A stretch of 64,000 bases of DNA from positions 186,001 to 250,000 of IMG/VR virus record IMGVR_UViG_3300024999_000030, one strand, 5' to 3'. Below the pieces are notes generated by a model. That model was not told the origin of the DNA. It made no database searches and saw only the letters and a program-made list of their open reading frames with translations. Position 1 is the stretch's first letter, and every line of letters starts with the position of its first letter. The position numbers and the translations under genes are program-made. Below are positions 4,252 through 43,620 of the stretch, in pieces.

Positions 4252-4974
4252 ATGAAAGCAGGCGTCGTTTCTGATCTGCATTTTGAATTACAACAGGACG
4301 GAGGACTAACTCTACTTAAAGAACTACATAGGAACCTTGGTGGGATTGATATCTTAATCTTAGCTGGAGATGTATCTGAATCCAGGGATATCATTACTCA
4401 CCTTGAGTTCCTATGTGGTTTGTTTAAAGAGGTAGTATTCGTTCTAGGAAATCATGACTTGTTTCATGGGTCATTCTCTTCTGTTAGGAAAGACCTGAAG
4501 GATAGAGCACCCAAGAATCTGCATTTTCTAGACAACGAAGTTTATGAAGTTGGTGGCAGAAGACTTGTGGGGTCCACCATGTTCTATCCCCATCATTGGG
4601 ATAATCAATTCCATCATCGTGACATGGCTGACTTTGAGTGGATTAAGGGATTTGTAAACGATGTCTATGCAGAAAATGCTACGGCACAGTATTTTCTTAA
4701 GACTACTGTTCGTAGAGACGACATCGTTATCACCCATCACTTACCCACTCCACGCAGTATCCTTCCCGCATATTCGGGTCATCCTTTAAATCGATTCTTC
4801 CTCTGTGATATGTCGGATGTGATTGTTAATCAAGAACCGGCTATTTGGATTCATGGACACACTCATAGCAGTTTAAACTATAAACTGTTTGAGACCCAAA
4901 TAATCTGCAACCCCTTCGGGAACCCAGATGGTGTGAACAAGGATTTTGATCCAGGGTTTGTGATAGAAATATAG
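4252..4974 (+). CDS. Calcineurin-like metallophosphoesterase
   Basis: SDLH, LAGD, LGNHD, THH and HGHTH motifs in canonical order. Confidence 0.92.
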   Translation: MKAGVVSDLHFELQQDGGLTLLKELHRNLGGIDILILAGDVSESRDIITHLEFLCGLFKEVVFVLGNHDLFHGSFSSVRKDLKDRAPKNLHFLDNEVYEVGGRRLVGSTMFYPHHWDNQFHHRDMADFEWIKGFVNDVYAENATAQYFLKTTVRRDDIVITHHLPTPRSILPAYSGHPLNRFFLCDMSDVIVNQEPAIWIHGHTHSSLNYKLFETQIICNPFGNPDGVNKDFDPGFVIEI

Positions 4975-10482: not shown

Positions 10483-10773
10483 ATGAATGGATTCACGAAC
10501 CATTATATTTCTGCAATGCAAGACTTCATCGCTAACCCCTGTGTAAAACGATGGCGAGGGGTTGAGAGATTAAGTGATCTTAATTGTAAATGTTTACTTT
10601 TAGGGGTTTCTCAAATAGGCTCCTGTGTCGGCTGTCCATTTTATTCTTTTCATCCGAATGGCAGTGCCTGTCCTCGCTTAAATACAGCCTCCAGAAAAAA
10701 ATTAAATTTGTTTATTCCAAGGTTAGTTCTTGCTTGTTTAGAAGCTATTGCTTATTTACAGGCTAAGGAGTAA
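10483..10773 (+). CDS. Four-Cys (FIxNP) family paralogue 1
   Basis: DFIANP...CKC...CVGCPF...CPR...LACLEAIAYL. Confidence 0.8.
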   Translation: MNGFTNHYISAMQDFIANPCVKRWRGVERLSDLNCKCLLLGVSQIGSCVGCPFYSFHPNGSACPRLNTASRKKLNLFIPRLVLACLEAIAYLQAKE

Positions 10774-10775
10774 AT

Positions 10776-11156
10776 ATGGCAAATTTAAGAAGGGTTACCG
10801 ATCAAAATCGTCAGGAACAAATTAAAGCCTTTGAGGCCTTTATTGATAATCCAACTTTGGAAAATCGGAAACACCTGGCGAAAGTGATGCTTTTTGATAG
10901 TGGGCGAGATGGCAAACGAGGCTTTTGTTCGCTTTCTCGGCGAGAAGATGAAGTCTATCCTATTGTTGAGGCTTGTGAGGGGTGCCCGTTTTTTACAAGT
11001 GGTCTCAAAAGTTATTGTCCAAGAACAGAATGGATAATGGAAGAGGACTTTCCTTCGTTAACCTTAAATCGTCGTGAAGAAATACAACAAGGCCAGGTTG
11101 CTGTTTTTATTCTGGCGTGTGTCCAGGCGATTGCTCACCTTAGGATTAAAGAGTAA
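10776..11156 (+). CDS. Four-Cys family paralogue 2
   Basis: AFIDNP...FCS...CEGCPF...YCPR...LACVQAIAHL. Confidence 0.8.
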   Translation: MANLRRVTDQNRQEQIKAFEAFIDNPTLENRKHLAKVMLFDSGRDGKRGFCSLSRREDEVYPIVEACEGCPFFTSGLKSYCPRTEWIMEEDFPSLTLNRREEIQQGQVAVFILACVQAIAHLRIKE

Positions 11157-11459
11157 ATGAAAGATATTTTGCAAAACTCTCTAAATGCTTTGCAAAATTT
11201 TATTGATAATCCTAATCCAGAAACCTTTAAACAGGTTTACGAATCTTTTGCAGTCTTTAGAGTATGTCCTCTTGCCACAAAATATGAAAATATAGATATG
11301 TATCATTGTGAAAATTGTCCATTTCCCCGTGTGTTTAATCGTACTCGACTATTACAATGCCTTAGACAATATGGATATAGCTTTGATTCATCGAAATATT
11401 TAGGCCAAATGCTTGTTGCTTGTATTGAAGCAAAGGTTCTTCTGGAGGGCAGTAAATGA
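11157..11459 (+). CDS. Four-Cys family paralogue 3
   Basis: NFIDNP...CPL...CENCPF...QCL...VACIEAKVLL. Confidence 0.8.
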   Translation: MKDILQNSLNALQNFIDNPNPETFKQVYESFAVFRVCPLATKYENIDMYHCENCPFPRVFNRTRLLQCLRQYGYSFDSSKYLGQMLVACIEAKVLLEGSK

Positions 11460-11809
11460 CGAGAATAGAAATACTTAAATCACAAATCAAAGCTCTTCAA
11501 TCTTTTATTAACAACCCAATTAAAAATAATTGGAATAATATTTCATTAGCTTTTACTCAGGGATCAGCAGGAGGTCAAAAATGTACTCTAGCTGGCCCCG
11601 ATAATTCATATGGAACATGTCGTTCGTGTGTTTGGGCTAAAATAGATTATACCTACCCACGAAGTAAACGGTTTCGTAAGTTGTTACTTGGACACACCAA
11701 TAGAGTAAAATACTGTGGACCAGCATATCCAGAGACCGAACAACTTCCTTCGGTTATCCTAGCCTGTATTGAATCTGTGGCTAAACTGGAGGTTCTTTTG
11801 GAGGAATAA
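11456..11809 (+). CDS. Four-Cys family paralogue 4
   Basis: SFINNP...KCTL...CRSCVW...YCGP...LACIESVAKL. Confidence 0.8.
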   Translation: MTRIEILKSQIKALQSFINNPIKNNWNNISLAFTQGSAGGQKCTLAGPDNSYGTCRSCVWAKIDYTYPRSKRFRKLLLGHTNRVKYCGPAYPETEQLPSVILACIESVAKLEVLLEE

Positions 11810-11810
11810 G

Positions 11811-12221
11811 ATGAAAAGAGAGAACATGGTAAGTGCCCACAATCTCAAACAACAGATTAGGGCGCTGGAAAACTTTATTTTTAATCCAATTAAATCCAAC
11901 TGGGCAGTTGTACATCGAGTTTTTTCTTATGATAACTATCAAGCCCATAAAAAATCCAACATAAAAGAAAACAGAAGTTGTTGTTCAGTTGCCTTTCTTT
12001 TATCCAGAAAAACCCTAACTCAAGATCAAGATGATAATTTCGCGTGCTCTACTTGTCCATTTTTCAAATTTCAAAATATTTGTTGCCCAAGAGCCGGCAT
12101 CAATGAAGACAGATGGCTAGAAGCAAAGACTTGGGAAGCCGTTCAAGAAAATCTACCACAAATTATTAAGAATTGTATTGAGTCTCTTGGGCTTATTAAA
12201 ACAGCCGAGGAGGGTCAATGA
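11811..12221 (+). CDS. Four-Cys family paralogue 5
   Basis: NFIFNP...SCC...CSTCPF...CCPR...KNCIESLGLI; GGAGG SD before 11811. Confidence 0.8.
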   Translation: MKRENMVSAHNLKQQIRALENFIFNPIKSNWAVVHRVFSYDNYQAHKKSNIKENRSCCSVAFLLSRKTLTQDQDDNFACSTCPFFKFQNICCPRAGINEDRWLEAKTWEAVQENLPQIIKNCIESLGLIKTAEEGQ

Positions 12222-12595
12222 GAAAAAGAATTCTTTTAGAGGAAGTGAATCATATTAATAAGGTCATTATTCTTTTAGAAAATTTTATTAATGATCCGAC
12301 AATACCTAAACTTCGGATGATTAGTGATAGTCTTAGAAACTATCCATATAGAGAAAATAAAATTTTTTCTTGTTTTATTAATGCCATCGTATTTACCGGA
12401 AATGAATATGAAAACAAAAGATGTAAACATTGCCCATGTAAGAGTGAACCGCTTATCAGTATGATAAACTGCTATGGTCAGCCTGGACTTTGTTTAGAGG
12501 ATCCAAGTGACGATATATTTTTTTGTAAAGACATTCCCGTTACCATTAAAGCCTTGTTGGAAATTATCGGACTATTAAAAACCAAACTCCCATAA
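12218..12595 (+). CDS. Four-Cys family paralogue 6
   Basis: NFINDP...SCF...CKHCPC...NCY...LLEIIGLL. Confidence 0.75.
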   Translation: MRKRILLEEVNHINKVIILLENFINDPTIPKLRMISDSLRNYPYRENKIFSCFINAIVFTGNEYENKRCKHCPCKSEPLISMINCYGQPGLCLEDPSDDIFFCKDIPVTIKALLEIIGLLKTKLP

Positions 12596-12596
12596 T

Positions 12597-12947
12597 ATGA
12601 AAGGAGAAGATATGTTTGAGTTAACTCAAGAATATATGGAACAGCTTGTAATTGACATGGAAACTTTCATATCTTCTCCTACAATAGCAAATTGGAAAAT
12701 CTTAACCTCCCGTATGAGGATAGCAAGTAAATGTCCATTCTCCATAGCAATAGATAATTGCTGTCCGCCTGGGTGGCCACGATCAGCCTGTAGAGCTTGT
12801 GGATTTGATGCACCATCTTCAATAGACCCATGGCTCGATGTTGAGACGGGCTGCAACTATCCGAGAGATGATAATTCTAAAGCTGAGGTTATACATTTAT
12901 TTATTCAGTTTATTGCTATGTATAAAATTTTAATTAAAGGAGATTAG
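12597..12947 (+). CDS. Four-Cys family paralogue 7
   Basis: TFISSP...KCPF...CRAC...GCN...FIQFIAMY. Confidence 0.7.
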   Translation: MKGEDMFELTQEYMEQLVIDMETFISSPTIANWKILTSRMRIASKCPFSIAIDNCCPPGWPRSACRACGFDAPSSIDPWLDVETGCNYPRDDNSKAEVIHLFIQFIAMYKILIKGD

Positions 12948-18546: not shown

Positions 18547-18730
18547 GAGCTGAAATGAAATTTAATAAAGGACACATCTTAGAGGCTGGAGATAGACTCC
18601 ATACGATGATTATTTTATCGGAGGAGTTGCTTAGAAATCATCCAGCACTTAAAAAAGCCAAATTAAACAAACGCTTTAAGAAAGTGATTAAAAAACTTAA
18701 TAACATGTATCAAAAAGTTTGGCAATTAAA

Positions 18731-19303
18731 ATGAAATCTCAGTCACTGAAACATAAATTCACTTACGAATGGATAGCGATATTTGGTTATGTTCCAGTTA
18801 AAAAAGACTTTGTCGCATACAATAGAAATGGTATAATTTTTCAAGGTCGTGTAATTTCTCCTCGCCCCACTTATTATGGAAACATTACCGTTGACCCTGG
18901 CGTTGGTTTAACTGAGCCCTTTCACATAGTCGGCGCGGCTGAGGTAATCTCAATTTTAACTTCAGATGGTAAGCGCTTTGCAAACGAAGAAAATAAATCT
19001 TCAGAAGGAATTTTTCCTGCTGGCTGGCAAATTCCTGTTGGTTGGCGAATTATGGGACCTAAGAAACAAGGAGGAGAAACGATGTGGTCTGATTATCCGA
19101 ATTTTAACCAAAACGGTGTTGACACAAGCGTGAATGATTTTTGGATTATTTTTTGTCCCGTCTGTAACAATGTAACTCTCGCCAAAGACGAGGCGGCGGT
19201 GAAGACCAAAGCAGAAGAGCTTACTGAGAAAAGCGGAAACCCTCATGTAATTTTTCACTCGAAGGGAGTTTGTACTCCAACCCGTAATGTGGTTTGGAGC
19301 TAA
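18731..19303 (+). CDS. Protein with shared C-terminal module (internal start at 19082)
   Basis: FWIIFCPVCNNVTL...CTPTRNVVWS nearly matches the end of 5687..7366. Confidence 0.7.
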   Translation: MKSQSLKHKFTYEWIAIFGYVPVKKDFVAYNRNGIIFQGRVISPRPTYYGNITVDPGVGLTEPFHIVGAAEVISILTSDGKRFANEENKSSEGIFPAGWQIPVGWRIMGPKKQGGETMWSDYPNFNQNGVDTSVNDFWIIFCPVCNNVTLAKDEAAVKTKAEELTEKSGNPHVIFHSKGVCTPTRNVVWS

Positions 19304-19310
19304 TATTATC

Positions 19311-19980
19311 TAGGGCCTCTTTCTGAATTGTAGGCTGAATTGACGAAAGCAGTGTGGACGAGATCAAACGGCTTAAATGAGCGTTTAGTCGCACTGAAAG
19401 GTTAAGGATGCCGAAGCCCTATTACATGGCGTGTCGGAAGAGGTGTCCCAGAAAGAAGGTGACTGTGTTTTATTGTCGCAGCCCTTGACTAATGTTTATA
19501 ATACAAAGTAATTGTATAAAAGAATATAATGAACGAGTAACCTGGGACGTAGGCTCATCCCCTCCTCAGGGCGTGTTAAATTTTTAAAACTGTTGCCTGA
19601 GACATCTTAACTAATGTTGGGTGTTGTAGAAGGGCGATAGTTAATTCTTGGATTAGAAATCATGCGGCCCCCTTATGATGAATTGAAACGTTTAATACCG
19701 CGCCAATCCCATAAGATGTGGTTCGAAAAACAACGCTGCAGCGTTGTAGTGACTCTAATCTAGAAAGGAGAATAACATTGGCCGCTTATATAAACATAAT
19801 GGTCAGATGTAGAAGCTCGGATTAAATAATCCCCATAACTAAAAAATGGAGTCGAGTGCCCGGGAAGTTGAACTGATATCCTTACAGGCTTTTAAAAATT
19901 AAGTCCACTATCCTGTGTTTAAAAATAAACCCAGGATCTGATGGTCAGATGTAAGATGTTATCAGTTTGCCCCGGGGCAA
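19311..19980 (+). ncRNA. Large structured non-coding region A
   Basis: No + strand ORF over 60 aa. Many stems by eye: TAGGGC/GCCCTA, CCTCTTTCTG/CAGAAAGAAGG, CTCAGG/CCTGAG, AACTGATA/TATCAGTT, CTTACA/TGTAAG, palindrome 19731..19746. Confidence 0.55.
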
Positions 19981-20035
19981 GGTTAATGCAGCCGGATGAT
20001 AATCCGCCAGTCCCAAGCCTGGAAATGCAGAGGGG
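19981..20035 (+). ncRNA. Twister ribozyme (P1-type order, weak or absent P1)
   Basis: U-AA, P2 UGC/GCA, A-GC, P3 CGGAU/AUCCG, P4 CCAG/CUGG, L4 UCCCAAGC, GA-GGG for T2 pseudoknot. Matches remembered twister consensus; predicted cut U19984/A19985. Confidence 0.85.
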
Positions 20036-20048
20036 AATAGGAAATGTT

Positions 20049-20360
20049 ATGAAAAAATATTCTATGCAAAATTTTAATGATGCTCTTGATAATTTAATTA
20101 ATAACCCGAGTAAAAAAACTTTCATTGCTTTTTTAAGAATTGCTGGTGAGGCTCCGGGAGATTGTCCACTATGTAGGTACTTAAGTAATGTCCGTAGACT
20201 AGATATACCTTGTTCATTTAAAGATTTGGATTGTCCTATGGGATTAAATTCAAATACCCATGAATTTGTATGTGCGCCATCATCTATAAATCTCATTCCT
20301 TTATCTAGAGTAGTAACCAAAGCAATCGAACTTAAAGCGTTCTTAGAAACAATAAAATAA
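20049..20360 (+). CDS. Four-Cys family paralogue 8
   Basis: NLINNP...DCPLC...CSF..DCP...VCAP...KAIELKAFL; the 5' extension in the ORF track overlaps the ribozyme. Confidence 0.75.
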   Translation: MKKYSMQNFNDALDNLINNPSKKTFIAFLRIAGEAPGDCPLCRYLSNVRRLDIPCSFKDLDCPMGLNSNTHEFVCAPSSINLIPLSRVVTKAIELKAFLETIK

Positions 20361-20363
20361 ATT

Positions 20364-20962
20364 ATGAAGACCACGCTTAATAATTCGAAAGAAAAACATA
20401 AGTGTGGGATGGAGTCAAACGAGCAAGTTAAGTGCTGTCCTGGATTTCACCGAGCAGGAAAATTTAACCCTAGTCGTTTGGCAAAAGAGATTAGCCGCTC
20501 AGCTAATGTAACGTTTAAACCCTTCCTTGGATGTCTAAATAGCCCAAGCGGGTTGGCTGAGGACTGGGCAATCTAAAGTTTCGGGCCGAGAAGGTGCCGG
20601 AATAAATATTTAAGACCACGAGCCGTGCTGGAATCATGAAAGTGATTTGAATCGTGGTATGAAGTTAGACGAGTATGGGCACGTTTATTGGGTAATCAAT
20701 ATCCTCGGCCCATACCCTCCTAAAAAGAGGACTGACTCGGGAGAGCCGAAGTACCAAAGTGCGTCTAGCGAAAGAACAGTCTCTTTGCGTTTTTCACATC
20801 CCCTGCCAGGATGTCTTTTACAGTCCTGTGCGAGCTATTGTGAAGAGGGAAGCACTGTTCCGAGTCTCGGGCCTGGATAGCTGCGGGACAAATATGGGGG
20901 AGCCAGTATCACACAATTAAACTGAAGAATAAGTTACGTTTAATTGTGACTACTGGTCCCCC
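20364..20962 (+). ncRNA. Large structured non-coding region B
   Basis: Nested GACTCG/CGAGTC, GAACAGT/ACTGTTC, TTCACA/TGTGAA; CTCAGC/GCTGAG; long terminal hairpin 20896..20962. The two ORFs here look non-protein-like. Confidence 0.5.
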
Positions 20963-20985
20963 TTTACTTTTTAAATGGAGGAAGT

Positions 20986-21369
20986 ATGCCGAAACTAATT
21001 TTAGTAAGGGGTTTACCTGGCAGTGGAAAATCTACCATTGCAATTCAAAATTACCCTCAGTTTGCACATTGGGAATCGGATATGTTCTTCATTAAAAAGA
21101 ATGGAGAATATATTTTCGACACTCGTTTAATCCATGTGGCTCATAAATGGTGTTTACATAAAGTTGAGACCGATCTTAAGAGTGGTAAAAATGTAATAGT
21201 AAGTAATACATTTATTGCTCGTTCAGATATAAAACCATATATAGAACTTGCTAATAAATTAAACATAGAAATTGAAGTAATTACTGCAAGAGGTGAGTAC
21301 GGAAGTATCCACGGTGTTTCAGAAGATATTATAACAAAAATGAAAATTAGATGGCAGGAGTACCCATGA
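20986..21369 (+). CDS. P-loop kinase (T4 Pnk kinase-like / AAA_33)
   Basis: LILVRGLPGSGKST Walker A; VIVSNTF; HGV near C-terminus. Confidence 0.85.
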   Translation: MPKLILVRGLPGSGKSTIAIQNYPQFAHWESDMFFIKKNGEYIFDTRLIHVAHKWCLHKVETDLKSGKNVIVSNTFIARSDIKPYIELANKLNIEIEVITARGEYGSIHGVSEDIITKMKIRWQEYP

Positions 21370-22727: not shown

Positions 22728-23060
22728 ATGCAACCATTTATTGCAGCACTTCAATCTTTTATCAATGAACCAAATTTAACCTCATGGTTAGATATGGTTG
22801 AAGTTTGGAGACATGAATCCTTACAAAGTAAAAACAAGGATTGCCCGATAAAATTTGAAATCGTCGGGATGAACACATTGATGTGTGGCGATTGTCCATT
22901 TTTAAATGCACATCCATGCCCATGGATAGTCAGTAATTTAGATTCCCCAAAAGGTAAAGAGCATTTTAAAGAAATACAAAGTATTCTTTTAGTCGATAGT
23001 ATTATTTTATTATCTAAATTACAAGCAATGGAAAATATAAATGTCAAAAAGAGAGACTGA
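22728..23060 (+). CDS. Four-Cys family paralogue 9
   Basis: SFINEP...DCPI...CGDCPF..PCPW...SIILLSKL. Confidence 0.8.
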   Translation: MQPFIAALQSFINEPNLTSWLDMVEVWRHESLQSKNKDCPIKFEIVGMNTLMCGDCPFLNAHPCPWIVSNLDSPKGKEHFKEIQSILLVDSIILLSKLQAMENINVKKRD

Positions 23061-23403
23061 TGCTAAAGTTATTCTTGTTAATTTTGTGAATCACCCAACA
23101 CCTGAAACTTGGGAAGAAGTACACAAATATTGGGAAATTCAAAATGCATGTCCATTTAATATAATGTATGAAGGCAGATGTGGTTGTTGTCCTTTTACAA
23201 GATTTGGAAAAAATCTTCATTTATCGATGCATGATTCAGCATTTGAACATCTTTGTCCATTTTATAAAAATACTCATTTAGATTTGAGTTCTAGGCTTGT
23301 TGCTAGTATTCAAGCCGTTGCTTATATAGAAACATATGAAAACTTAGAGATAGAGCAACTGGTTCCCCTGTGGACAAGGGAAATCAACAAGGGTGGAGGA
23401 TAA
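23041..23403 (+). CDS. Four-Cys family paralogue 10
   Basis: NFVNHP...ACPF...CGCCPF...LCPF...ASIQAVAYI. Confidence 0.8.
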   Translation: MSKRETDAKVILVNFVNHPTPETWEEVHKYWEIQNACPFNIMYEGRCGCCPFTRFGKNLHLSMHDSAFEHLCPFYKNTHLDLSSRLVASIQAVAYIETYENLEIEQLVPLWTREINKGGG

Positions 23404-23604
23404 AAATAAAATGAGAAAAAATAAATTTTTCAAAAACTTTATTGCGTCTCTCAAAGAAGCAATAACAATGAATATCAATCGTAAAGATCCCCCACCTAAA
23501 ACCACATATAGAACTTTAAATGATGGTAGTGTCCTTAGAACTATCACATATTATAGTTCCGATGGTCAAGTTGTGAGAACGGAAACTGACCACTTGCCAA
23601 AGTA

Positions 23605-23929
23605 ATGTTATATCAAAAAACAATTAATGCTTTAAGGTTATTTACAGAACAACCTAACCCCCATAATTGGAAAAATATTTCATTAGCATTAATTGATGAA
23701 TCTAATGAACTACTACAACAATGTTTATTGGGCTCTCCTGGACCAACCAAGGGATCTCCAGCCCATTGTTGTGATTGTCCATTTTGGCAAATATAAACAA
23801 ACTAATACATTTTGCCCTAGGTTTATATACAGAAGGCCTTCTATCGAAAGATTTGGAGAGGCAGTTTCCGTTGTTATGGCCATTCAAGCTATTGCTAGAT
23901 TAGAAATGTTAGCTGAAGAACATGAGTGA
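23605..23929 (+). pseudogene. Four-Cys family paralogue 11, split by +1 frameshift near 23780-23795
   Basis: Frame 1 LFTEQP...QCL...CCDCPFW stop; +1 frame continues KYKQTNTFCPR...MAIQAIARLE. Confidence 0.75.
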
Positions 23930-24221
23930 ATATATAAAAGATTATTCTTTTATTATTAACAGAATATTATTTAAAAAGGCATTGGAAGAATTTATATCTA
24001 ATGTTAACGAGGATTCATTCCAACTTTTGAAAAGATTTGCCTTGTCTGGTATATCATGTAGGGTATTGGCCCCCACTCGTTATCAAAATCCATATTGTTA
24101 TGGGTGTTGTTTCCAATCTGAGCGCGGGTGTATATTGAGCACAAATACCGCCGAAACAGTTCTTGGTAGTATACAGGCTTTAGCTTTTATTCTTTCGGAG
24201 GAGGAAGATGGCAGAACCTAG
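23922..24221 (+). CDS. Four-Cys family paralogue 12
   Basis: EFISNV...SCR...CYGCCF..GCIL...GSIQALAFI. Confidence 0.75.
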   Translation: MSEYIKDYSFIINRILFKKALEEFISNVNEDSFQLLKRFALSGISCRVLAPTRYQNPYCYGCCFQSERGCILSTNTAETVLGSIQALAFILSEEEDGRT

Positions 24222-24474
24222 TAATATAAAATACCTTAAGAGGTTTATTGCGTGCCCCTCTTCTGAAAATTGGGAAGAGGTAAAAATTCATGCGGTAAGA
24301 GATTGTTATTTTGGGTCTGAATGCCCATTAATAAATATCAACAATGGGTGTTGTCCACTTTTAACTAGTGTACCGTCCGAAAACTATCCCACTTCAGATG
24401 ACTTACCTAAGCTCACCGTCATTGCTATTCAATATTTGGCGCTACTGGAATCTAGGGGAACAAAAAACTACTAA
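24208..24474 (+). CDS. Four-Cys family paralogue 13
   Basis: RFIACP...DCY..ECPL...CCPL...IAIQYLALL. Confidence 0.75.
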   Translation: MAEPSNIKYLKRFIACPSSENWEEVKIHAVRDCYFGSECPLININNGCCPLLTSVPSENYPTSDDLPKLTVIAIQYLALLESRGTKNY

Positions 24475-24831
24475 CTAAGGAGATAGAATTGGATAAGCAT
24501 AGTAAACTTGGTATCGTTTCATTTATTATCTCTGTTTTTTCTATCGTAACTTTCTTTATGACCTTGGTTCTTGGAATAGTTATCACAAGCGGAAGAATGG
24601 AACCTCAATCTGGTATTGCCGTTTTTTCTGGATTGATTTATTGTTTTGATATGGTTGCATCTATTGTTGGTGTTGGTTTAGCTATCGGGGGTTTTTGTAC
24701 ACAGAGTAAACATCTTTTCTGCTGGTTAGGCGGGGTGATGAATGTATTGTTTCTTATTGGAGTAATGCTTCTTCTTGTTATTGGCACAATGGTTTCGTAG
24801 TTGTTACTCCGTCCCTGGAGAAAAAGCATTT

Positions 24832-24961
24832 CCATAGAGAGGATCTGGACACGGGACAACCCCGGCTCTCTATGGCGTGTTGACTTCCCCGACCCTCGAA
24901 AGGTCCGGCCTGATCCTCAGGCAGGAAGTACGGTGGGGCTGGGGCAGCTGGCCCCGGCCCC
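24832..24961 (+). ncRNA. GC-rich structured intergenic RNA ending in a terminator-like hairpin
   Basis: CCATAGAGAG/CTCTCTATGG; three-way junction ACTTCC/GGAAGT with GACC/GGTC and GCCTGA/TCAGGC; GGGGCTGGGGC/GCCCCGGCCCC followed by T-rich tract. Confidence 0.55.
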
Positions 24962-24991
24962 TTGATATTTTAAAAAACTTTGGAGGTTCAT

Positions 24992-25480
24992 ATGAAATAT
25001 TACAGAGTAAATAATCTTAAAGAAAATCACATGGGCCTTCAATATAAAACTGGTTTAGTGGAAGATTATCGACGATGTGGGATTGGTTTTCTAGGTGGTA
25101 TTCATTTTGCTAGTGTAGATATTCTTGCATTCATTAATTTTGGACCATGGATTAGGGAAGTAACTATTCCCTCCAACACTATTATTCATAAGGCCGGATA
25201 CAACGCTAAAGAGTTTAAGGCTCAACGAGTTATTCTTGGTGAACGAAGGAAAATTACACTATCAGTAATTAAAGAATTAGTTTCTGAGGGGGCAGATGTC
25301 AACGCCGTTAATGGGACTCCCCTTATCAATGCCACCTGTCTTAGAAATTTTGGGCTTGTGAAGACACTGTTGGACTGTGGTGCAAATCCCATGGTGTCTG
25401 ATGCTGAGGCTCTGAAAATAGCAAGTAAGATTAATCGCTATGATATTTTAAACCTTTTAACTGGGACCACGAATGAGTAA
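24992..25480 (+). CDS. Ankyrin-repeat-containing protein
   Basis: LVSEGADVNA.NGTPLINA...LVKTLLDCGANP; GGAGG SD. Confidence 0.75.
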   Translation: MKYYRVNNLKENHMGLQYKTGLVEDYRRCGIGFLGGIHFASVDILAFINFGPWIREVTIPSNTIIHKAGYNAKEFKAQRVILGERRKITLSVIKELVSEGADVNAVNGTPLINATCLRNFGLVKTLLDCGANPMVSDAEALKIASKINRYDILNLLTGTTNE

Positions 25481-25793
25481 ACCTAAAAAATCATCTAAAT
25501 TTAACGATGATGAAATTGTTGTTTTCGTTTATAATTTAATGAAAGAATTTATTAGTAATCCAAATATTAAATTATGGGAAGACATTCTTGAAGGCTTTCC
25601 ATGTCGATTTGATGATTGTGAAAATTGTCCCATGAGTCGAATCAATTGTTTTGATATTGATAGTGAGGGGTGGGAAAAAACAACAGGCATGTGTGTAACT
25701 TGCTCTATAGAAATTATAGCTATGTGTGAGTCTGAGATTTTTCCATTCAGACCTTCTACATGTAACTCAAAAGAAAAGTGGAGAATGGAATGA
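25473..25793 (+). CDS. Four-Cys family paralogue 14
   Basis: EFISNP...PCR..CENCPM..NCF...CSIEIIAMC. Confidence 0.8.
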   Translation: MSKPKKSSKFNDDEIVVFVYNLMKEFISNPNIKLWEDILEGFPCRFDDCENCPMSRINCFDIDSEGWEKTTGMCVTCSIEIIAMCESEIFPFRPSTCNSKEKWRME

Positions 25794-27430: not shown

Positions 27431-27787
27431 ATGATTCCACATAGGGAGTGGATAAATTCTATGGAAAATTTTATCCGCGATCCTAGTTTTGAAAACATGT
27501 TGATGGTAAGAAAAATTAGAGACGATTACGGTTGCTCCAGCTACTCTCGTGATGGACAGCAGGGAAGGGGACCGCTTTGGCCTAGAGATGGTAGAAGCAT
27601 ATCCAGTTTATGTAAGGAGTGTCCATTCCAAACACATGTGGGCGCGGTTGGAGGATGGTGTTTATTACAAGAGTTAAGAGATAAAAAACATTTTATTACT
27701 TACTCTGGTTTATTAATTGAGCGATCAAAAAAAGCTGTAAATGATTTACGTGGAATGTGGTCAGATTCCCGAGGAAATCAATTCTGA
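27431..27787 (+). CDS. Four-Cys family paralogue 15
   Basis: NFIRDP...GCS...CKECPF...WCLL. Confidence 0.75.
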   Translation: MIPHREWINSMENFIRDPSFENMLMVRKIRDDYGCSSYSRDGQQGRGPLWPRDGRSISSLCKECPFQTHVGAVGGWCLLQELRDKKHFITYSGLLIERSKKAVNDLRGMWSDSRGNQF

Positions 27788-28235: not shown

Positions 28236-29127
28236 GTGTTGTGGCTATAATTTGTGGCTATCTAACATTAATCTACAATAGGAGAATAAAAATGGATTGG
28301 ATCGTAAATCTTATCACCGAATGGAAGTGGAATGGATTTATGTCACTTTTACTTTATTGGCTCCCGCTTTCGTTCTGTGTAGTCGGTTATACTTTACGTA
28401 CCGCCCGAAATTATATTAGAGATAAAAGAAGACTCGCGGAATATTTAAGCAGCAGGGGCAATAAGGTTGCTAAATCTAAAGAAATTATTTATCCAAGACA
28501 AGAATATTATCCTACCGACACCATAGGAACCCTTATTGGTAGATCGATTGTTTCCATTGTTCCTATCGGAAATCTTTGGGCTGCATTGTTTGACCTTGCC
28601 CCCGAAGTCTTTCGTAAGTTTTTTAAGTGGCTCGGCAAAGTATTTGATTTTCCGCTTGTGCCTGGACCGAAAGAAGATGCCTAAAGTAGACATTGACGCT
28701 CTAGAAAAACTTTACAATGAATCTACTCCGGGGCCATGGATAGTTAGGGATATGAAATTTGTTCATGCCCCATGCCCCTGTTGTGGAGATGTTGCTGAGT
28801 GCGTGCAGTATGGCCCAGGAAATGATAAGGAAAACTACAATACAGAAATTATCGTGGCGATGCACACAGCCCTACCGCACCTCATTACTGAACTAAGAGC
28901 CGCAAGAAGAAAGAATAGGAAAAAGTAAATGGAAAATAAATACAAACAAGTGTTGGAGACTTATAGATGCTTATTGAGTTGCAGAAAAAATCTTCCAGGA
29001 CTTAGCCTAGAAAGCGCATTTAATGAAGATGCCGTTAGGGATTTGGAAGAAGAATATGCTTGGCTGCAACAACAAAAACAATATGAAAGCCATACCGGGA
29101 TTAATTGTCCTCCTCCATAATTTAAAA

Positions 29128-29385
29128 GTGGACCTCGCCAGTGTGTAAGTAGGCACTCCCAGAATCATTTACAAGGGGGAGACACCGACGGCTGGAAGGT
29201 AGTATAATATTTATACTATCATCTGGTGAGATGCCCCATTGGAGGCCTAGCTTCGTCAAATCTCCATCGCGGTAAGGTGGAAATGATGGGCGGACTAGAA
29301 GCCCTCTGTCGCCACCGCTCTAGTGAAGATTGTTCCTAGAGCCGGCTCGTCGATGTAAGTCGGCGAGTCGTAATGTAGGAATAAA
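29128..29385 (+). ncRNA. Candidate structured RNA D
   Basis: CTCGCCAG/CTGGTGAG, CTCCC/GGGAG, TAGTATA/TATACTA, CCATC/GATGG, GCTCTAG/CTAGAGC, CTCGTCGA/TCGGCGAG. Confidence 0.5.
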
Positions 29386-29412
29386 TCTAACTTAACTTAT
29401 ATCGGAGATAAC

Positions 29413-29589
29413 ATGGCCAACAAACGGTGGGAAGAATACGGTCACGTGGTTGAAGAAGTTAGAAGTGAGTGGCATAAGGTGATTTATGTAGATGGTGTTC
29501 AGGTTAATGAGACTTTCAGTGAGGCTATTGGAAGAATTATGGCCGAGGAAAGTTTAAAGAAATTAATGAATCCAAATCCTAAACAGTAA
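29413..29589 (+). CDS. 58-aa hypothetical protein between two structured RNAs (not in ORF track)
   Basis: GGAG SD, ATG 29413, MANKRWEEYG...NPNPKQ stop. Confidence 0.55.
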   Translation: MANKRWEEYGHVVEEVRSEWHKVIYVDGVQVNETFSEAIGRIMAEESLKKLMNPNPKQ

Positions 29590-29592
29590 CAC

Positions 29593-29828
29593 CACATTAA
29601 CGCGGGAAGTAGGCTTAAGGGCAGCCATCTTTTAAAGAGTGAGGGCTGGCCATGTGCAGATAATATCGTCTTCGTTCGCAGGGTAGCATAAGAAGACCGA
29701 AGGATAGATTTTTAAAAATTCACAATCTATCTGGGGACGGCCATGGGCACCACTTGCAGCAAACAGAGGATTGTCAAGGACAATCTGTACTGTTCCTCTC
29801 TGGCGTAAAAGCACACCTCGTTAATGTG
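29593..29828 (+). ncRNA. 23S rRNA L11-binding (GTPase-associated centre, H43/H44) mimic with 162-nt insert
   Basis: GGAAGTAGGCTTAAGGGCAGCCATCTTTTAAAGAGT(G)...GCGTAAAAGCACAC versus remembered E. coli 23S ~1055-1104 GGAUGUUGGCUUAGAAGCAGCCAUCAUUUAAAGAAAGCGUAAUAGCUCAC; closed by perfect CACATTAACG/CGTTAATGTG. Confidence 0.8.
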
Positions 29829-31468: not shown

Positions 31469-31804
31469 ATGGAAAATTTTTCTTCATATATATATGAGCT
31501 TTATAGTGCTTCTAAGTCTTTTATTGAGGGTCCAAATGAAACAACTTGGAATGAACTTTCGTTAGCAACGGTCACGTGTCAGCTCTACAAATATAAAAAA
31601 GATAAAACTGAGGAATCCTATAAACATCATTGTGAGGATTGTCCTTTTTGGCCTATTTTACATTCACATAGTCATATTAATAATCCTGGGTGTCGTCACG
31701 ATTCCAGATCTAAATTACCAATAGCCGTTAGGTTAAGTAAAATTATAGAACTCATGGCTCTATTGGAAACTGAGTTTAGCTGGGTGGGTAAATATGGGAG
31801 ATGA
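31469..31804 (+). CDS. Four-Cys family paralogue 16
   Basis: SFIEGP...TCQL...CEDCPF...GCR...KIIELMALL. Confidence 0.8.
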   Translation: MENFSSYIYELYSASKSFIEGPNETTWNELSLATVTCQLYKYKKDKTEESYKHHCEDCPFWPILHSHSHINNPGCRHDSRSKLPIAVRLSKIIELMALLETEFSWVGKYGR

Positions 31805-32081
31805 AGGAAAAGTAGGACAAATGTATGACATGCGTACTATAAAACAACTTACAAATTTTATTAATCAACCTACTCAGGTAAATTGGGAAAAAATAAACTT
31901 TACTCATGATAGTTGCTATATATCTGACGAAGCTAATTGTTGTCATAATTGCCCATTTTTAAATTCATCAAATGGAGTTTGTTTAGCAATACATGGAAAT
32001 TTAGAAATAGGAAAAAAATTAGCATTGAGCATTGCGTTACGCGCAAAGCTGCAAGCTATTTGGGGTGAATATGAGCTATAG
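31794..32081 (+). CDS. Four-Cys family paralogue 17
   Basis: NFINQP...SCYI..CCHNCPF..VCL...LSIALRAKL. Confidence 0.8.
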   Translation: MGDEGKVGQMYDMRTIKQLTNFINQPTQVNWEKINFTHDSCYISDEANCCHNCPFLNSSNGVCLAIHGNLEIGKKLALSIALRAKLQAIWGEYEL

Positions 32082-32349
32082 CGGAAAATGGGGCAGAGAA
32101 TATGACATGCGCATAATGAAACAGCTTAAAATTTTTATTGATAAACCTACACAAAATAATTGGGAAAAAATACCCTTCACTTCCGATGGTTGCTATATAT
32201 CTATCGAAGCTGGATGTTGTCATGAATGCCCATTTGACAATGAAGAGAGTTGTAAAGCTGTAAAATCTGGATTAGACATTGGAAAAAGATTAGCATTAAG
32301 CATTGAATTACTTGCAAAATTACAAGTTGTTTGGGGTGAAGATGGGTAG
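32071..32349 (+). CDS. Four-Cys family paralogue 18 (recent duplicate of 17)
   Basis: IFIDKP...GCYI..CCHECPF..SCK...LSIELLAKL. Confidence 0.8.
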   Translation: MSYSGKWGREYDMRIMKQLKIFIDKPTQNNWEKIPFTSDGCYISIEAGCCHECPFDNEESCKAVKSGLDIGKRLALSIELLAKLQVVWGEDG

Positions 32350-32640
32350 ATTAGATGATATGATAAAAGCTTTACAAGATTTTATTCGTGATCCCAACAC
32401 ACAAAATTGGCTTAATATTAATAAAGTAAGGGTCGATGTTATTAGAGGCGGATGTTTTTTCTCTTATAGTGTCTCAACCAGCGATGAGTGTCGAGATTGT
32501 CCATATGGACGAAAAAATACAACAGACCCATTTTTTTGTACTTCAGCTCTTTGGAAAAAAAGGCGGAAGAAGGAAATACAGCTAGAAAATTACTTGGGGC
32601 AATAGAAATTTTGGCCAAACTAGAGGCCGTGAAAGGATAA
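32342..32640 (+). pseudogene. Four-Cys family paralogue 19, frameshifted at or near A7 run 32555..32561
   Basis: DFIRDP...GCF...CRDCPY...FCT; the -1 frame supplies the missing helix TARKLLGAIEILAKLE, stop at 32640. Confidence 0.8.
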
Positions 32641-42868: not shown

Positions 42869-43603
42869 TTTCTTTCTTCATTCAAACTATTCCCCACATA
42901 AAGAACCATCTCCCTTCCCTCCTAATTATAGGTGAATGAAGGAGTAATGTTCTAGGAAATTGAATTTGATAGAAGAAAGAAAACTCCAATTAGGCCGATG
43001 GCGATTGTTTGAACGCTCAACTCTCGTTTGCGTGAAGACCCACTCAGATCGATTGGCCAGGCGTTTACATGGAAGAGTAGACATGGCTAGAGATATCTCT
43101 CTTGTTTATTCTTTCTTTTATGAGTGTGTTACTCTATTGGGGCGGTTTCGATACCAATCCACAGTATGCGTCCATGATAAGTTATGGAATAGAGATGGCA
43201 TACTCTAGAAGGCGGACGGTCGTGTCCGCCTTCGCCAAACACCTGTATTACTGAGAGGGTGTATGGTTCCTAAAGTTGGAACCATTTACTACATCGTCGG
43301 TTCTTTTGCAGAGAAAAAGGTCAATGGCATGACGCCGCAAAGATTGTTGTGCTTCGGCACACCTTTGAGTCTGGGCAGGCTTATTATATAAGCCCAGCCG
43401 GTTCTGCAATTCCCAACTCGCGCTTATGAATCACAAATCAACGTTGCTACGTGAGTGCAGTCAGGCAGCTGACCAGTAATACTTATTGAATTGACTACCG
43501 GTAGTGGTCATTCAATCGGGGTCATCATGGTGATGACCCCACAATCCGGCTAAAACTAATCTTCTGGTGGAGCCGGGGAAGAGCATGTGCTCAGGAAGAT
43601 TAG
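42869..43603 (+). ncRNA. Large structured non-coding region E (about 735 nt)
   Basis: GAAGGCGGAC/GTCCGCCTTC, ATGGTTCC/GGAACCAT, GTGC-UUCG-GCAC, TTGCAGA/TCTGCAA, GGGGTCATCA/TGATGACCCC, CTAATCTTC/GAAGATTAG. Confidence 0.65.
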
Positions 43604-43620
43604 GGAATAGGAGATAACTA

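What the first reader, a model, noticed from the sequence alone, without database searches (positions are those of the whole stretch)
19981..20049. Twister ribozyme 15 nt upstream of a Cys-family gene
Seen: all remembered twister core elements are present in order, but P1 cannot pair well. Known: P1-less mini-twisters still cleave, giving 5'-OH and 2',3'-cyclic phosphate ends. Inference: cleavage creates a 5'-OH, decay-resistant mRNA for paralogue 8. The Pnk-like kinase (20986) and phosphoesterases could process such ends.
Basis: partly seen in the sequence, partly recalled or inferred. Interest (0 to 1): 0.7.

Follow-up and report, generated by a model that had tools for sequence, protein, structure and literature searches.

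The report
Phage twister ribozyme heading a small gene
A real twister self-cleaving ribozyme lies just before a small cysteine-rich gene in a 333-kb groundwater phage; this placement is ordinary for phage twisters, but here the ribozyme and gene lie between two conserved, folded, unclassified non-coding RNA stretches.

Summary
Window 19980-20038 (+) matches Rfam twister-P1 at 49.2 bits (E 6e-8 for the whole window). Every conserved core nucleotide is present, P2, P3, P4 and both pseudoknots pair fully, and P1 is essentially absent. The score is below Rfam's gathering score of 67.2, but so were 19 of 21 other phage twisters tested here.

A syntenic relative (L120) has the ribozyme at the same place, with an identical core. 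The protein after it has drifted to 37% identity.

The ribozyme has a P0 hairpin directly upstream and a ribosome-binding site and ATG (20049) directly downstream. In my sample, 56 of 70 distinct viral twisters have a start codon this close.

Cleavage at U19984|A19985 would most likely cut a longer transcript. The upstream RNA would end in a hairpin with a cyclic phosphate, and the mRNA would begin with a 5'-OH and the folded ribozyme. Cleavage itself, transcript stability, and any role for the neighbouring kinase or the phage's RtcB ligase are untested.

The kinase is polynucleotide-kinase-like by fold, but its homologues in other phages have no twister nearby.

New here: the roughly 660-nt and 600-nt flanks are non-coding, conserved, rich in compensatory pairs, and match no Rfam family.

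The parts
19304..19965 (+). Upstream non-coding flank A: conserved structured RNA of unknown class
   Evidence: No ORF under the standard code or with any one stop codon read through. Single-sequence fold z = -2.8. Conserved blocks against L120 at 74-78% identity. RNAalifold gives 30 compensatory pairs against 15.3 (maximum 20) in column shuffles, energy z about -10.7. No codon periodicity in substitutions. No Rfam family at E<=10.
19966..19981 (+). P0/L0 hairpin abutting the ribozyme: 6 pairs, CCGG loop
   Evidence: Pairs listed. In L120 the three outer pairs are C-G where the window has U.G, U-A and U-A, so the stem is kept through changes. P0/L0 is a described auxiliary stem-loop of twisters (PMC11662667).
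19980..20038 (+). Type-P1 twister ribozyme with P3, no real P1; predicted cleavage between U19984 and A19985
   Evidence: Rfam RF03160, 49.2 bits, E 6.2e-8. Pair table. Orthologue in L120 at 11355-11413 scores 57.7 bits, E 7.7e-12.
20039..20044 (+). Shine-Dalgarno-like AGGAAA inside the conserved block GGGAAUAGGA
   Evidence: The block is identical in the window and L120 directly after the ribozyme. It lies 4 nt before ATG 20049.
20049..20360 (+). 103-aa Cys-rich helical protein gene, the ribozyme's downstream cistron
   Evidence: ORF. The start is confirmed by the L120 orthologue, which begins at the aligned ATG (37% identity). It shares the family motif (N-terminal helix, four conserved Cys, C-terminal helix) with about 28 paralogues. 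AlphaFold2 pLDDT 87, no PDB match. No Pfam or PHROG family.
20361..20895 (+). Downstream non-coding flank B: conserved structured RNA with two weakly similar modules (each AAGACCACG ... GGATGTCT)
   Evidence: Fold z = -4.8. 68% identity to L120, in alternating conserved and variable blocks. 24 of 145 predicted pairs are compensatory, against 14.9 (maximum 21) in shuffles; energy z about -11.5; slid-partner controls give 0-3. The start codon of the 70-aa ORF at 20364 is absent in L120. No codon periodicity. No Rfam family.
20896..20962 (+). Long hairpin closing flank B, followed by a U-rich tract in the window only
   Evidence: -37 kcal/mol, z = -4.9. The stem is conserved with compensatory changes in L120, where no U-tract follows.
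20986..21369 (+). 127-aa polynucleotide-kinase-like P-loop kinase, syntenic neighbour (link to the ribozyme unproven)
   Evidence: Pfam AAA_33, E 2e-9. PHROG 505 polynucleotide kinase, E 1e-10. AlphaFold2 pLDDT 91. Foldseek best hits are 4JT2/4GP7 and 1LY1. Same position in L120, 74% identity.

Best explanation
Window 19980-20038 encodes a working type-P1 twister ribozyme with P0 and P3 auxiliary hairpins and no P1. It lies inside a roughly 1.7-kb conserved RNA-rich unit of a jumbo phage, between a 660-nt structured non-coding RNA and a small Cys-rich protein gene.

When the + strand is transcribed, the ribozyme folds and cuts between U19984 and A19985. The upstream RNA then ends in the P0 hairpin plus GUU with a 2',3'-cyclic phosphate. 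The downstream mRNA begins with a 5'-OH and carries the compact 50-nt ribozyme fold as its leader. Its ribosome-binding site (AGGA, 20039-42) and ATG (20049) are left single-stranded because no P1 strand has to pair with them. The cut therefore separates two RNAs with different fates from one transcript.

Shown: the motif, its statistical significance, its full set of pairs, its conservation in a relative, and its typical placement. Inferred: cleavage itself, co-transcription with flank A, and the effect on stability or translation.
For: The Rfam match has E 6.2e-8 and is unique in the genome. All core pairs and both pseudoknots form.

The orthologous ribozyme in L120 has every core nucleotide identical. 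It differs only in one extra P3 base pair, the P3 loop, and the length of the junction between P4 and P2 (AAA versus AUAAA). Over the same distance the downstream protein fell to 37% identity and the flanks to about 70%. The P0 stem is kept through three changed pairs.

Of 70 distinct viral type-P1 twisters, 56 have a Shine-Dalgarno sequence plus start codon within 40 nt after GAGGG. Only 125 of 550 control positions in the same loci do.

P1 is dispensable for cleavage (PMC5408937) and imperfections in it are tolerated (PMC11662667). Processing of polycistronic phage-associated transcripts has already been proposed for bacterial twisters and hammerheads (PMC6765202).
Against: There is no transcript or cleavage data. 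No RNA run was listed that holds the locus, and the two RNA-labelled runs laid gave no reads.

The score is below Rfam's gathering score. The junction between P4 and P2 is 3 nt, against the consensus 5. P0/L0 hairpins lowered cleavage in vitro (mean 0.40 versus 0.85, PMC11662667).

No promoter is mapped, so the ribozyme might trim only a short leader rather than release flank A. The 70 viral twisters are not phylogenetically independent.
Confidence: 0.65

Rival explanations
1. The ribozyme's main job is to make the 3' end of the upstream large structured RNA (flank A). It would release that RNA as a separate, hairpin-capped non-coding RNA; the effect on the downstream mRNA would be secondary.
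For: Flank A is conserved and structured. P0 sits exactly at what would be its 3' end and covaries. P0-like hairpins without U-tracts are common directly upstream of viral twisters.
Against: This does not exclude the main explanation. The tight, conserved coupling of ribozyme to ribosome-binding site points at least equally to the downstream gene. The enrichment of hairpins over controls is modest, 53 of 70 versus 305 of 550. No evidence shows that flank A accumulates as an RNA.
Confidence: 0.25
2. The whole 19304-20985 unit is a mobile or intron-like RNA element with an embedded gene, and the twister frees that gene's mRNA. This would be analogous to the twin-ribozyme group I introns, in which a second ribozyme creates the 5' end of the homing-endonuclease mRNA.
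For: Two large structured RNA halves flank a small ORF headed by a ribozyme. More distant homologues of the upstream protein (L125-L127) are followed directly by ordinary genes, with no RNA-rich unit.
Against: No group I or II intron match in the unit at E<=10, and no group I match there in the genome-wide search. The flanking genes are complete: the upstream protein ends at the same residues in homologues that lack the unit, and the kinase starts at its P-loop in all homologues. Nothing is interrupted. The embedded protein is not a known endonuclease.
Confidence: 0.07
3. The motif is a decayed or chance twister look-alike without activity, or it is simply the N-terminal coding sequence of a 124-aa protein, as automatic gene callers annotate it.
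For: Below Rfam's gathering score. P1 absent. Short junction. The reading frame is open from 19941, and AUG 19986 is in frame.
Against: E 6e-8, with every invariant nucleotide intact. The core is perfectly conserved in L120 while its surroundings diverged. In L120 the same AUG is out of frame with the ORF, and the orthologue starts at the aligned downstream ATG. The paralogue family's conserved N-terminus begins about 5 residues after ATG 20049.
Confidence: 0.04

Closest known systems
Twister ribozyme, type P1 (Rfam RF03160; O. sativa and env22 structures)
   Same: Order and identity of all conserved core nucleotides, P2 and P4, both pseudoknots, optional P3 and P0 hairpins, and the cleavage site before the conserved A.
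   Different: No P1 stem in either of the two related phages. The junction between P4 and P2 is 3 nt in the window. The score is below the curated Rfam cut-off. Activity is untested.
Twister and hammerhead ribozymes next to phage and prophage genes, proposed to process polycistronic mRNAs (reviewed in PMC6765202)
   Same: Intergenic, on the same strand as the genes, with its 3' end a few nucleotides before a ribosome-binding site. I found this arrangement in 56 of 70 distinct viral twisters.
   Different: The host genome is a 333-kb groundwater jumbo phage. The ribozyme lies between long conserved structured non-coding regions rather than between two closely packed genes.
Twin-ribozyme group I intron of Didymium (lariat-capping ribozyme upstream of a homing-endonuclease ORF); general knowledge, not tested here
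   Same: A small ribozyme inside a larger structured RNA creates the 5' end of an embedded gene's mRNA.
   Different: No intron signature, no interrupted host gene, a different ribozyme class, and an embedded protein of unknown function.
[quoted passage not shown]
   Same: Structured non-coding RNAs of mostly unknown function found near twister and hammerhead ribozymes. A RAGATH-28 match lies in one of the viral twister loci (L008).
   Different: Flanks A and B match no RAGATH or other Rfam model at E<=10 and are much longer than most RAGATH motifs.
T4 Pnk and Clostridium thermocellum Pnkp kinase domains (for the neighbouring gene)
   Same: P-loop fold and best structural matches. PHROG 505 polynucleotide kinase.
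   Different: Kinase domain only, 127 aa, with no phosphatase or ligase domain. No sequence-level PDB hit. Substrate unknown.

Membership tests
Twister ribozyme (type P1) | Conserved core nucleotides in order (U-AA, GCC, GUCCCAAGCC, A-rich junction, GAGGG) | tested here: met
   All present and exact; only the A-rich junction is 3 nt instead of 5.
Twister ribozyme (type P1) | Stems P2 and P4 and pseudoknots T1 and T2 can form | tested here: met
   4, 3, 2 and 3 standard pairs respectively, with no mismatch.
Twister ribozyme (type P1) | P1 stem closing the motif | tested here: not met
   Only A19980-U20038 and U19983.G20035 of four positions pair, and A19980 is also claimed by P0. P1 is likewise absent in L120. 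The literature shows P1 is conserved but dispensable for catalysis (PMC5408937, PMC11662667), so its absence does not bar catalytic membership.
Twister ribozyme (type P1) | Covariance-model score at or above Rfam's gathering score (67.2 bits) | tested here: not met
   49.2 bits in the window and 57.7 in L120, although E is 6e-8. In the calibration, 19 of 21 viral twisters with intact cores also fell below the cut-off.
Twister ribozyme (type P1) | Conservation in relatives, with changes that keep the pairs | tested here: met
   One relative only. The core is identical, P3 differs by a whole base pair, and P0 is kept through three changed pairs.
Twister ribozyme (type P1) | Site-specific self-cleavage giving 2',3'-cyclic phosphate and 5'-OH ends | not testable with these tools
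   No RNA data hold the locus. An in vitro assay is needed.
5'-OH polynucleotide kinase (gene 20986-21369) | P-loop kinase fold closest to Pnk/Pnkp kinase domains | tested here: met
   AlphaFold2 pLDDT 91. Best Foldseek hits are 4JT2, 4GP7, 1LY1 and 1LTQ, E 2e-6 to 2e-4, TM 0.73-0.78. PHROG 505, E 1e-10.
5'-OH polynucleotide kinase (gene 20986-21369) | Phosphorylation of 5'-OH RNA ends, in particular the ribozyme product | not testable with these tools
   The P-loop (G12-T17), E30 and D32 are invariant in 34 homologues. The substrate is unknown, and homologues in other phages lack nearby twisters.

The most novel reading that the evidence does not exclude
The twister is the internal processing site of a conserved 1.7-1.8-kb RNA-rich unit. 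In this reading the two flanks (about 660 and 600 nt) are members of one or two undescribed classes of large structured phage RNA. The ribozyme releases the upstream one as a hairpin-capped RNA with a cyclic-phosphate end, and it launches the mRNA of a small Cys-rich protein that may act with these RNAs. The adjacent Pnk-like kinase and the phage's RtcB could then remodel the 5'-OH and cyclic-phosphate ends.
Probability: 0.3. Interest if true: 0.65.

Novelty: new member of a known kind. Interest (0 to 1): 0.42.

Why it matters
What most genomic twister ribozymes do is still an open question. This locus gives a clean natural case. It is a P1-less, P0-bearing twister held perfectly constant while its surroundings diverge, fused to a ribosome-binding site, and placed between two large conserved structured RNAs, with a polynucleotide-kinase-like gene next door and an RtcB ligase elsewhere in the genome.

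It also shows two practical points. Rfam's gathering score misses most phage twisters. And the arrangement 'hairpin, twister, ribosome-binding site' recurs across viral contigs, which makes the mRNA-processing hypothesis testable on many loci. The ribozyme itself is not surprising; the unclassified flanking RNAs are the part worth following.

Tried and rejected
- Rfam default scan of the window: nothing, because the twister is below the gathering score. The E-value mode found it.
- Other ribozymes or known RNAs in the flanks: none credible at E<=10 in either phage. The only group I intron hit in the genome is weak and elsewhere.
- Alternative genetic codes as an explanation for the ORF-free flanks. 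The genome has a CTA-anticodon tRNA, but no long ORF appears when any one stop codon is read through.
- Hidden coding in the flanks: similarity is spread over all three frames and substitutions show no codon periodicity.
- Leaderless mRNA starting at AUG 19986, one nucleotide after the cut: rejected, because that AUG is out of frame in L120.
- A duplicated degenerate twister upstream, suggested by the 13-mer repeat: the alignment shows only the 13-mer.
- Paralogues of the flanks in the genome: none by nhmmer or blastn.
- More relatives: IMG/VR, the JGI metagenome scan, the 5.8-billion and 1.84-billion protein libraries and exact conserved-block searches gave only identical copies and L120. The 15 prokaryotic hits to an 18-base pattern are about what chance predicts, by my estimate.
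- Transcript evidence: no RNA run was listed as holding the locus, and the DNA runs showed no variants.
- A general kinase-twister association: not found.
- A covariance model of the flank-B module: started and abandoned, because MAFFT misaligned the hairpins and only four sequences exist.

Full report
**Where the window lies.** The window is bases 186001-250000 of a 332,730-bp IMG/VR virus record that CheckV rates complete. It was assembled from groundwater metagenomes. Nearly all genes are on the + strand. The genome carries 29 tRNA genes. It is a jumbo phage with no close relative among deposited phages.

**Is the twister there?** Yes.
- Rfam's default scan reports nothing, because the match scores below the curated gathering score.
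- With E-value reporting, twister-P1 (RF03160) matches window 19980-20038 on the + strand at 49.2 bits. E is 5.8e-10 for the local search and 6.2e-8 for the whole window against all families.
- It is the only such match in the genome.
- The 17-base core pattern occurs once, where 0.03 is expected.
- Reading the sequence: U19984|A19985 is the predicted scissile step. P2 (UGCA/UGCA), pseudoknot T1 (GC/GC), P3 (5 pairs, GAUA loop), P4 (3 pairs), the L4 loop GUCCCAAGCC and pseudoknot T2 (CCC/GGG) all form without a mismatch.
- P1 is effectively missing, with one A-U and one U.G out of four positions. The junction between P4 and P2 is AAA where the consensus has five nucleotides.

**Does the sub-threshold score matter?** I scanned 19 short viral loci that contain the exact twister core. 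Of the 21 twister-P1 matches found, only two reached 67.2 bits; the rest ranged from 35 to 66. The gathering score is therefore very strict for phage twisters, and 49 bits lies within the range of plausible members.

**Conservation.**
- The protein directly upstream (18719-19303) has one 42%-identical homologue in 5.8 billion proteins.
- Its contig, L120 (JGI, 22.7 kb), is syntenic. It has the homologue, then an ORF-free gap of about 880 nt, a 108-aa gene, a gap of about 614 nt, and then the same 127-aa kinase.
- Rfam finds a twister at the corresponding place, L120 11355-11413, at 57.7 bits and E 7.7e-12.
- In the alignment every core nucleotide is identical. The differences are one whole extra U-A pair and a different tetraloop in P3, and AUAAA instead of AAA in the junction.
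- Over the same evolutionary distance the downstream protein fell to 37% identity, the kinase to 74% and the flanks to about 70%. The ribozyme is under strong purifying selection.
- P1 is absent in L120 too, so its loss is a stable feature of this lineage and not recent decay.

**The start of the gene.**
- Automatic gene calling gives a 124-aa product starting at AUG 19986, one nucleotide after the cut. That raised the idea of a leaderless mRNA.
- In L120 the same AUG is out of frame, and the orthologue starts at the ATG aligned with window 20049.
- The conserved N-terminal helix of the paralogue family begins a few residues after that ATG.
- The gene is therefore 20049-20360 and encodes 103 aa. 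The block GGGAAUAGGA, which contains the Shine-Dalgarno-like AGGA, is identical in both phages.

**The hairpin upstream.**
- Directly before the ribozyme lies a 6-pair hairpin with a CCGG loop (19966-19981). Two nucleotides separate it from U19984.
- In L120 the three outer pairs are C-G where the window has U.G, U-A and U-A, so the stem is maintained through changes.
- This is the P0/L0 auxiliary stem-loop described for twisters. It is reported in about 10% of tested candidates and lowered cleavage in vitro (PMC11662667).

**Placement compared with other viral twisters.**
- I found 70 distinct type-P1 copies among them. Of these, 56 have a Shine-Dalgarno-like sequence and a start codon of an ORF of at least 50 aa within 40 nt after GAGGG. 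Only 125 of 550 control positions in the same loci and strand do.
- 53 of the 70 have a stable hairpin just upstream, against 305 of 550 controls. This is a weaker enrichment.
- P1 is usually only 3-4 pairs and shows no contiguous pairs from the cleavage site in 14 of the 70.
- These copies are not phylogenetically independent.
- The window's copy (14 nt to the ATG, with P0 present) fits this common pattern. Reviews already note that bacterial twisters and hammerheads lie near phage genes and may process polycistronic transcripts (PMC6765202).

**How it most likely works.**
- Shown: a conserved, complete twister core, oriented with the genes, with P0 on its 5' side and the ribosome-binding site on its 3' side.
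- From established knowledge: twisters cut to give a 2',3'-cyclic phosphate and a 5'-OH, and they do so without P1 at nearly wild-type rate (PMC5408937).
- Inferred: the transcript is cut at 19984|19985. The upstream RNA ends in P0 plus GUU with a cyclic phosphate, which should resist 3' exonucleases. The mRNA begins with a 5'-OH buried in the ribozyme fold.
- Because no P1 strand has to pair with the nucleotides after GAGGG, the ribosome-binding site stays free.
- Whether the 5'-OH stabilises the mRNA depends on the unknown host's RNases. From general knowledge, 5'-OH ends escape 5'-monophosphate-dependent RNase E but are attacked by RNase J1 in Bacillus.
- No transcript data exist for this phage.

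The gene and ribozyme lie between two long ORF-free stretches, 19304-19965 and 20361-20985.
- No ORF appears under the standard code or with any one stop codon read through.
- The putative start of the 70-aa ORF at 20364 is not conserved.
- Translated similarity to L120 is spread over all three frames, and substitutions show no codon periodicity, unlike the coding controls.
- Both flanks fold better than dinucleotide shuffles, with z = -2.8 and -4.8.
- Against L120 they show alternating invariant and variable blocks.
- RNAalifold predicts 145 pairs in flank B, of which 24 are compensatory, and 109 pairs in flank A, of which 30 are compensatory. Column shuffles give about 15 (maximum 20-21). 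Slid-partner controls give 0-3 for flank B and 2-7 for flank A. Consensus energies have z near -11.
- Flank B contains two weakly similar modules, each opening with AAGACCACG, containing a covarying GAAA-loop hairpin, and closing near GGATGTCT.
- Flank B ends in a long conserved hairpin at 20896-20962.
- Neither flank matches any Rfam family at E<=10 in either phage. Neither has a paralogue in the genome.
- With only two sequences I cannot define a family. They are conserved structured RNAs of unknown class.
- They are not an intron in a protein gene. The upstream protein ends at the same residues in homologues that lack the unit, and the kinase begins at its P-loop in all homologues.

**The kinase, the phosphoesterases and RtcB.**
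- Gene 20986-21369 is an AAA_33 P-loop protein. It matches PHROG 505 'polynucleotide kinase' at E 1e-10.
- Its confident AlphaFold2 model (pLDDT 91) is closest to the kinase domains of C. thermocellum Pnkp and T4 Pnk (E 2e-6, TM about 0.76). 'Pnk-like' is fair.
- It is one member of a widespread family, with 445 homologues at E<=1e-10. Five loci carrying three homologues from other phages have no twister core within 10 kb.
- A metallophosphoesterase lies 15 kb upstream, at window 4252-4869.
- The phage also encodes RtcB, outside the window at genome 264121-265227. RtcB joins exactly the kinds of ends a twister makes. I found no Rnl2-type ligase. The Rnl1 search also found nothing, but its controls found nothing either, so it is uninformative.
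- With 29 tRNAs in the genome, tRNA repair is the more usual role for such enzymes (general knowledge). A link to the ribozyme remains speculation.

**The downstream protein.**
- It belongs, marginally by sequence (iterated search E 5e-4) but clearly by motif, to a family of about 28 small Cys-rich paralogues in this genome.
- The model is a confident helical bundle (pLDDT 87) with no significant PDB match.
- It has no Pfam or PHROG family. Its function is unknown.

**Verdict.** The ribozyme is a new member of a known kind, in a placement typical of phage twisters. The modest novelty lies in the lineage-stable loss of P1 and, above all, in the two unclassified conserved structured RNAs that flank the ribozyme-gene pair.

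Noticed in passing
Outside the window: genome G000:C1:14708-14783: Among the phage's 29 tRNA genes, ARAGORN calls one with anticodon CTA, which would read the TAG stop codon. This hints at stop-codon suppression or recoding. Reading TAG through did not change the ORF picture around the twister.
   Followed up: partly
window 10483-12947, 22728-25793, 27431-27787, 31469-32605 and elsewhere in the genome: About 28 paralogues of a small (about 90-150 aa) Cys-rich protein. They share an N-terminal helix (FIxNP..W), a C..CPF motif and a C-terminal helix, and are often arranged in tandem arrays. The member after the twister models as a confident helical bundle with no PDB match. No Pfam or PHROG family.
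   Followed up: partly
window 43209-43620 and 29121-29631: Two further ORF-free, relatively G+C-rich stretches. The first folds far better than shuffles (z = -6.0); the second modestly so (z = -2.4). Neither matches an Rfam family. The phage may carry several unclassified structured RNAs.
   Followed up: partly
Outside the window: genome G000:C1:264121-265227: A full-length RtcB RNA ligase gene (Pfam E 4e-107). RtcB joins 2',3'-cyclic-phosphate or 3'-phosphate ends to 5'-OH ends.
   Followed up: no
window 19799-19811 and 19941-19953: The 13-mer ATGGTCAGATGTA occurs twice, 142 nt apart, and nowhere else in the genome. The core of the first copy (GGTCAGATG) is conserved in L120; the second copy is not. 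Meaning unknown.
   Followed up: partly
L013, L026, L053, L062 (viral contigs); L008: In several unrelated viral contigs a tRNA gene lies about 230-250 nt upstream of a twister on the same strand. One twister-bearing locus (L008) also holds a RAGATH-28 RNA.
   Followed up: no
window 20896-20962: A roughly 25-pair hairpin just before the kinase gene. It is followed by a U-rich tract in the window, so it looks like a terminator, but not in L120, where the stem is conserved with compensatory changes.
   Followed up: partly
Outside the window: genome G000:C1:120084-120235: A weak group I intron-like match (17 bits, E 0.009, far below the cut-off). Probably chance.
   Followed up: no
window 20044-20052: A two-codon mini-ORF (AUG UUA UGA) overlaps the gene's start codon. 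It is absent in L120, so it is probably fortuitous.
   Followed up: yes
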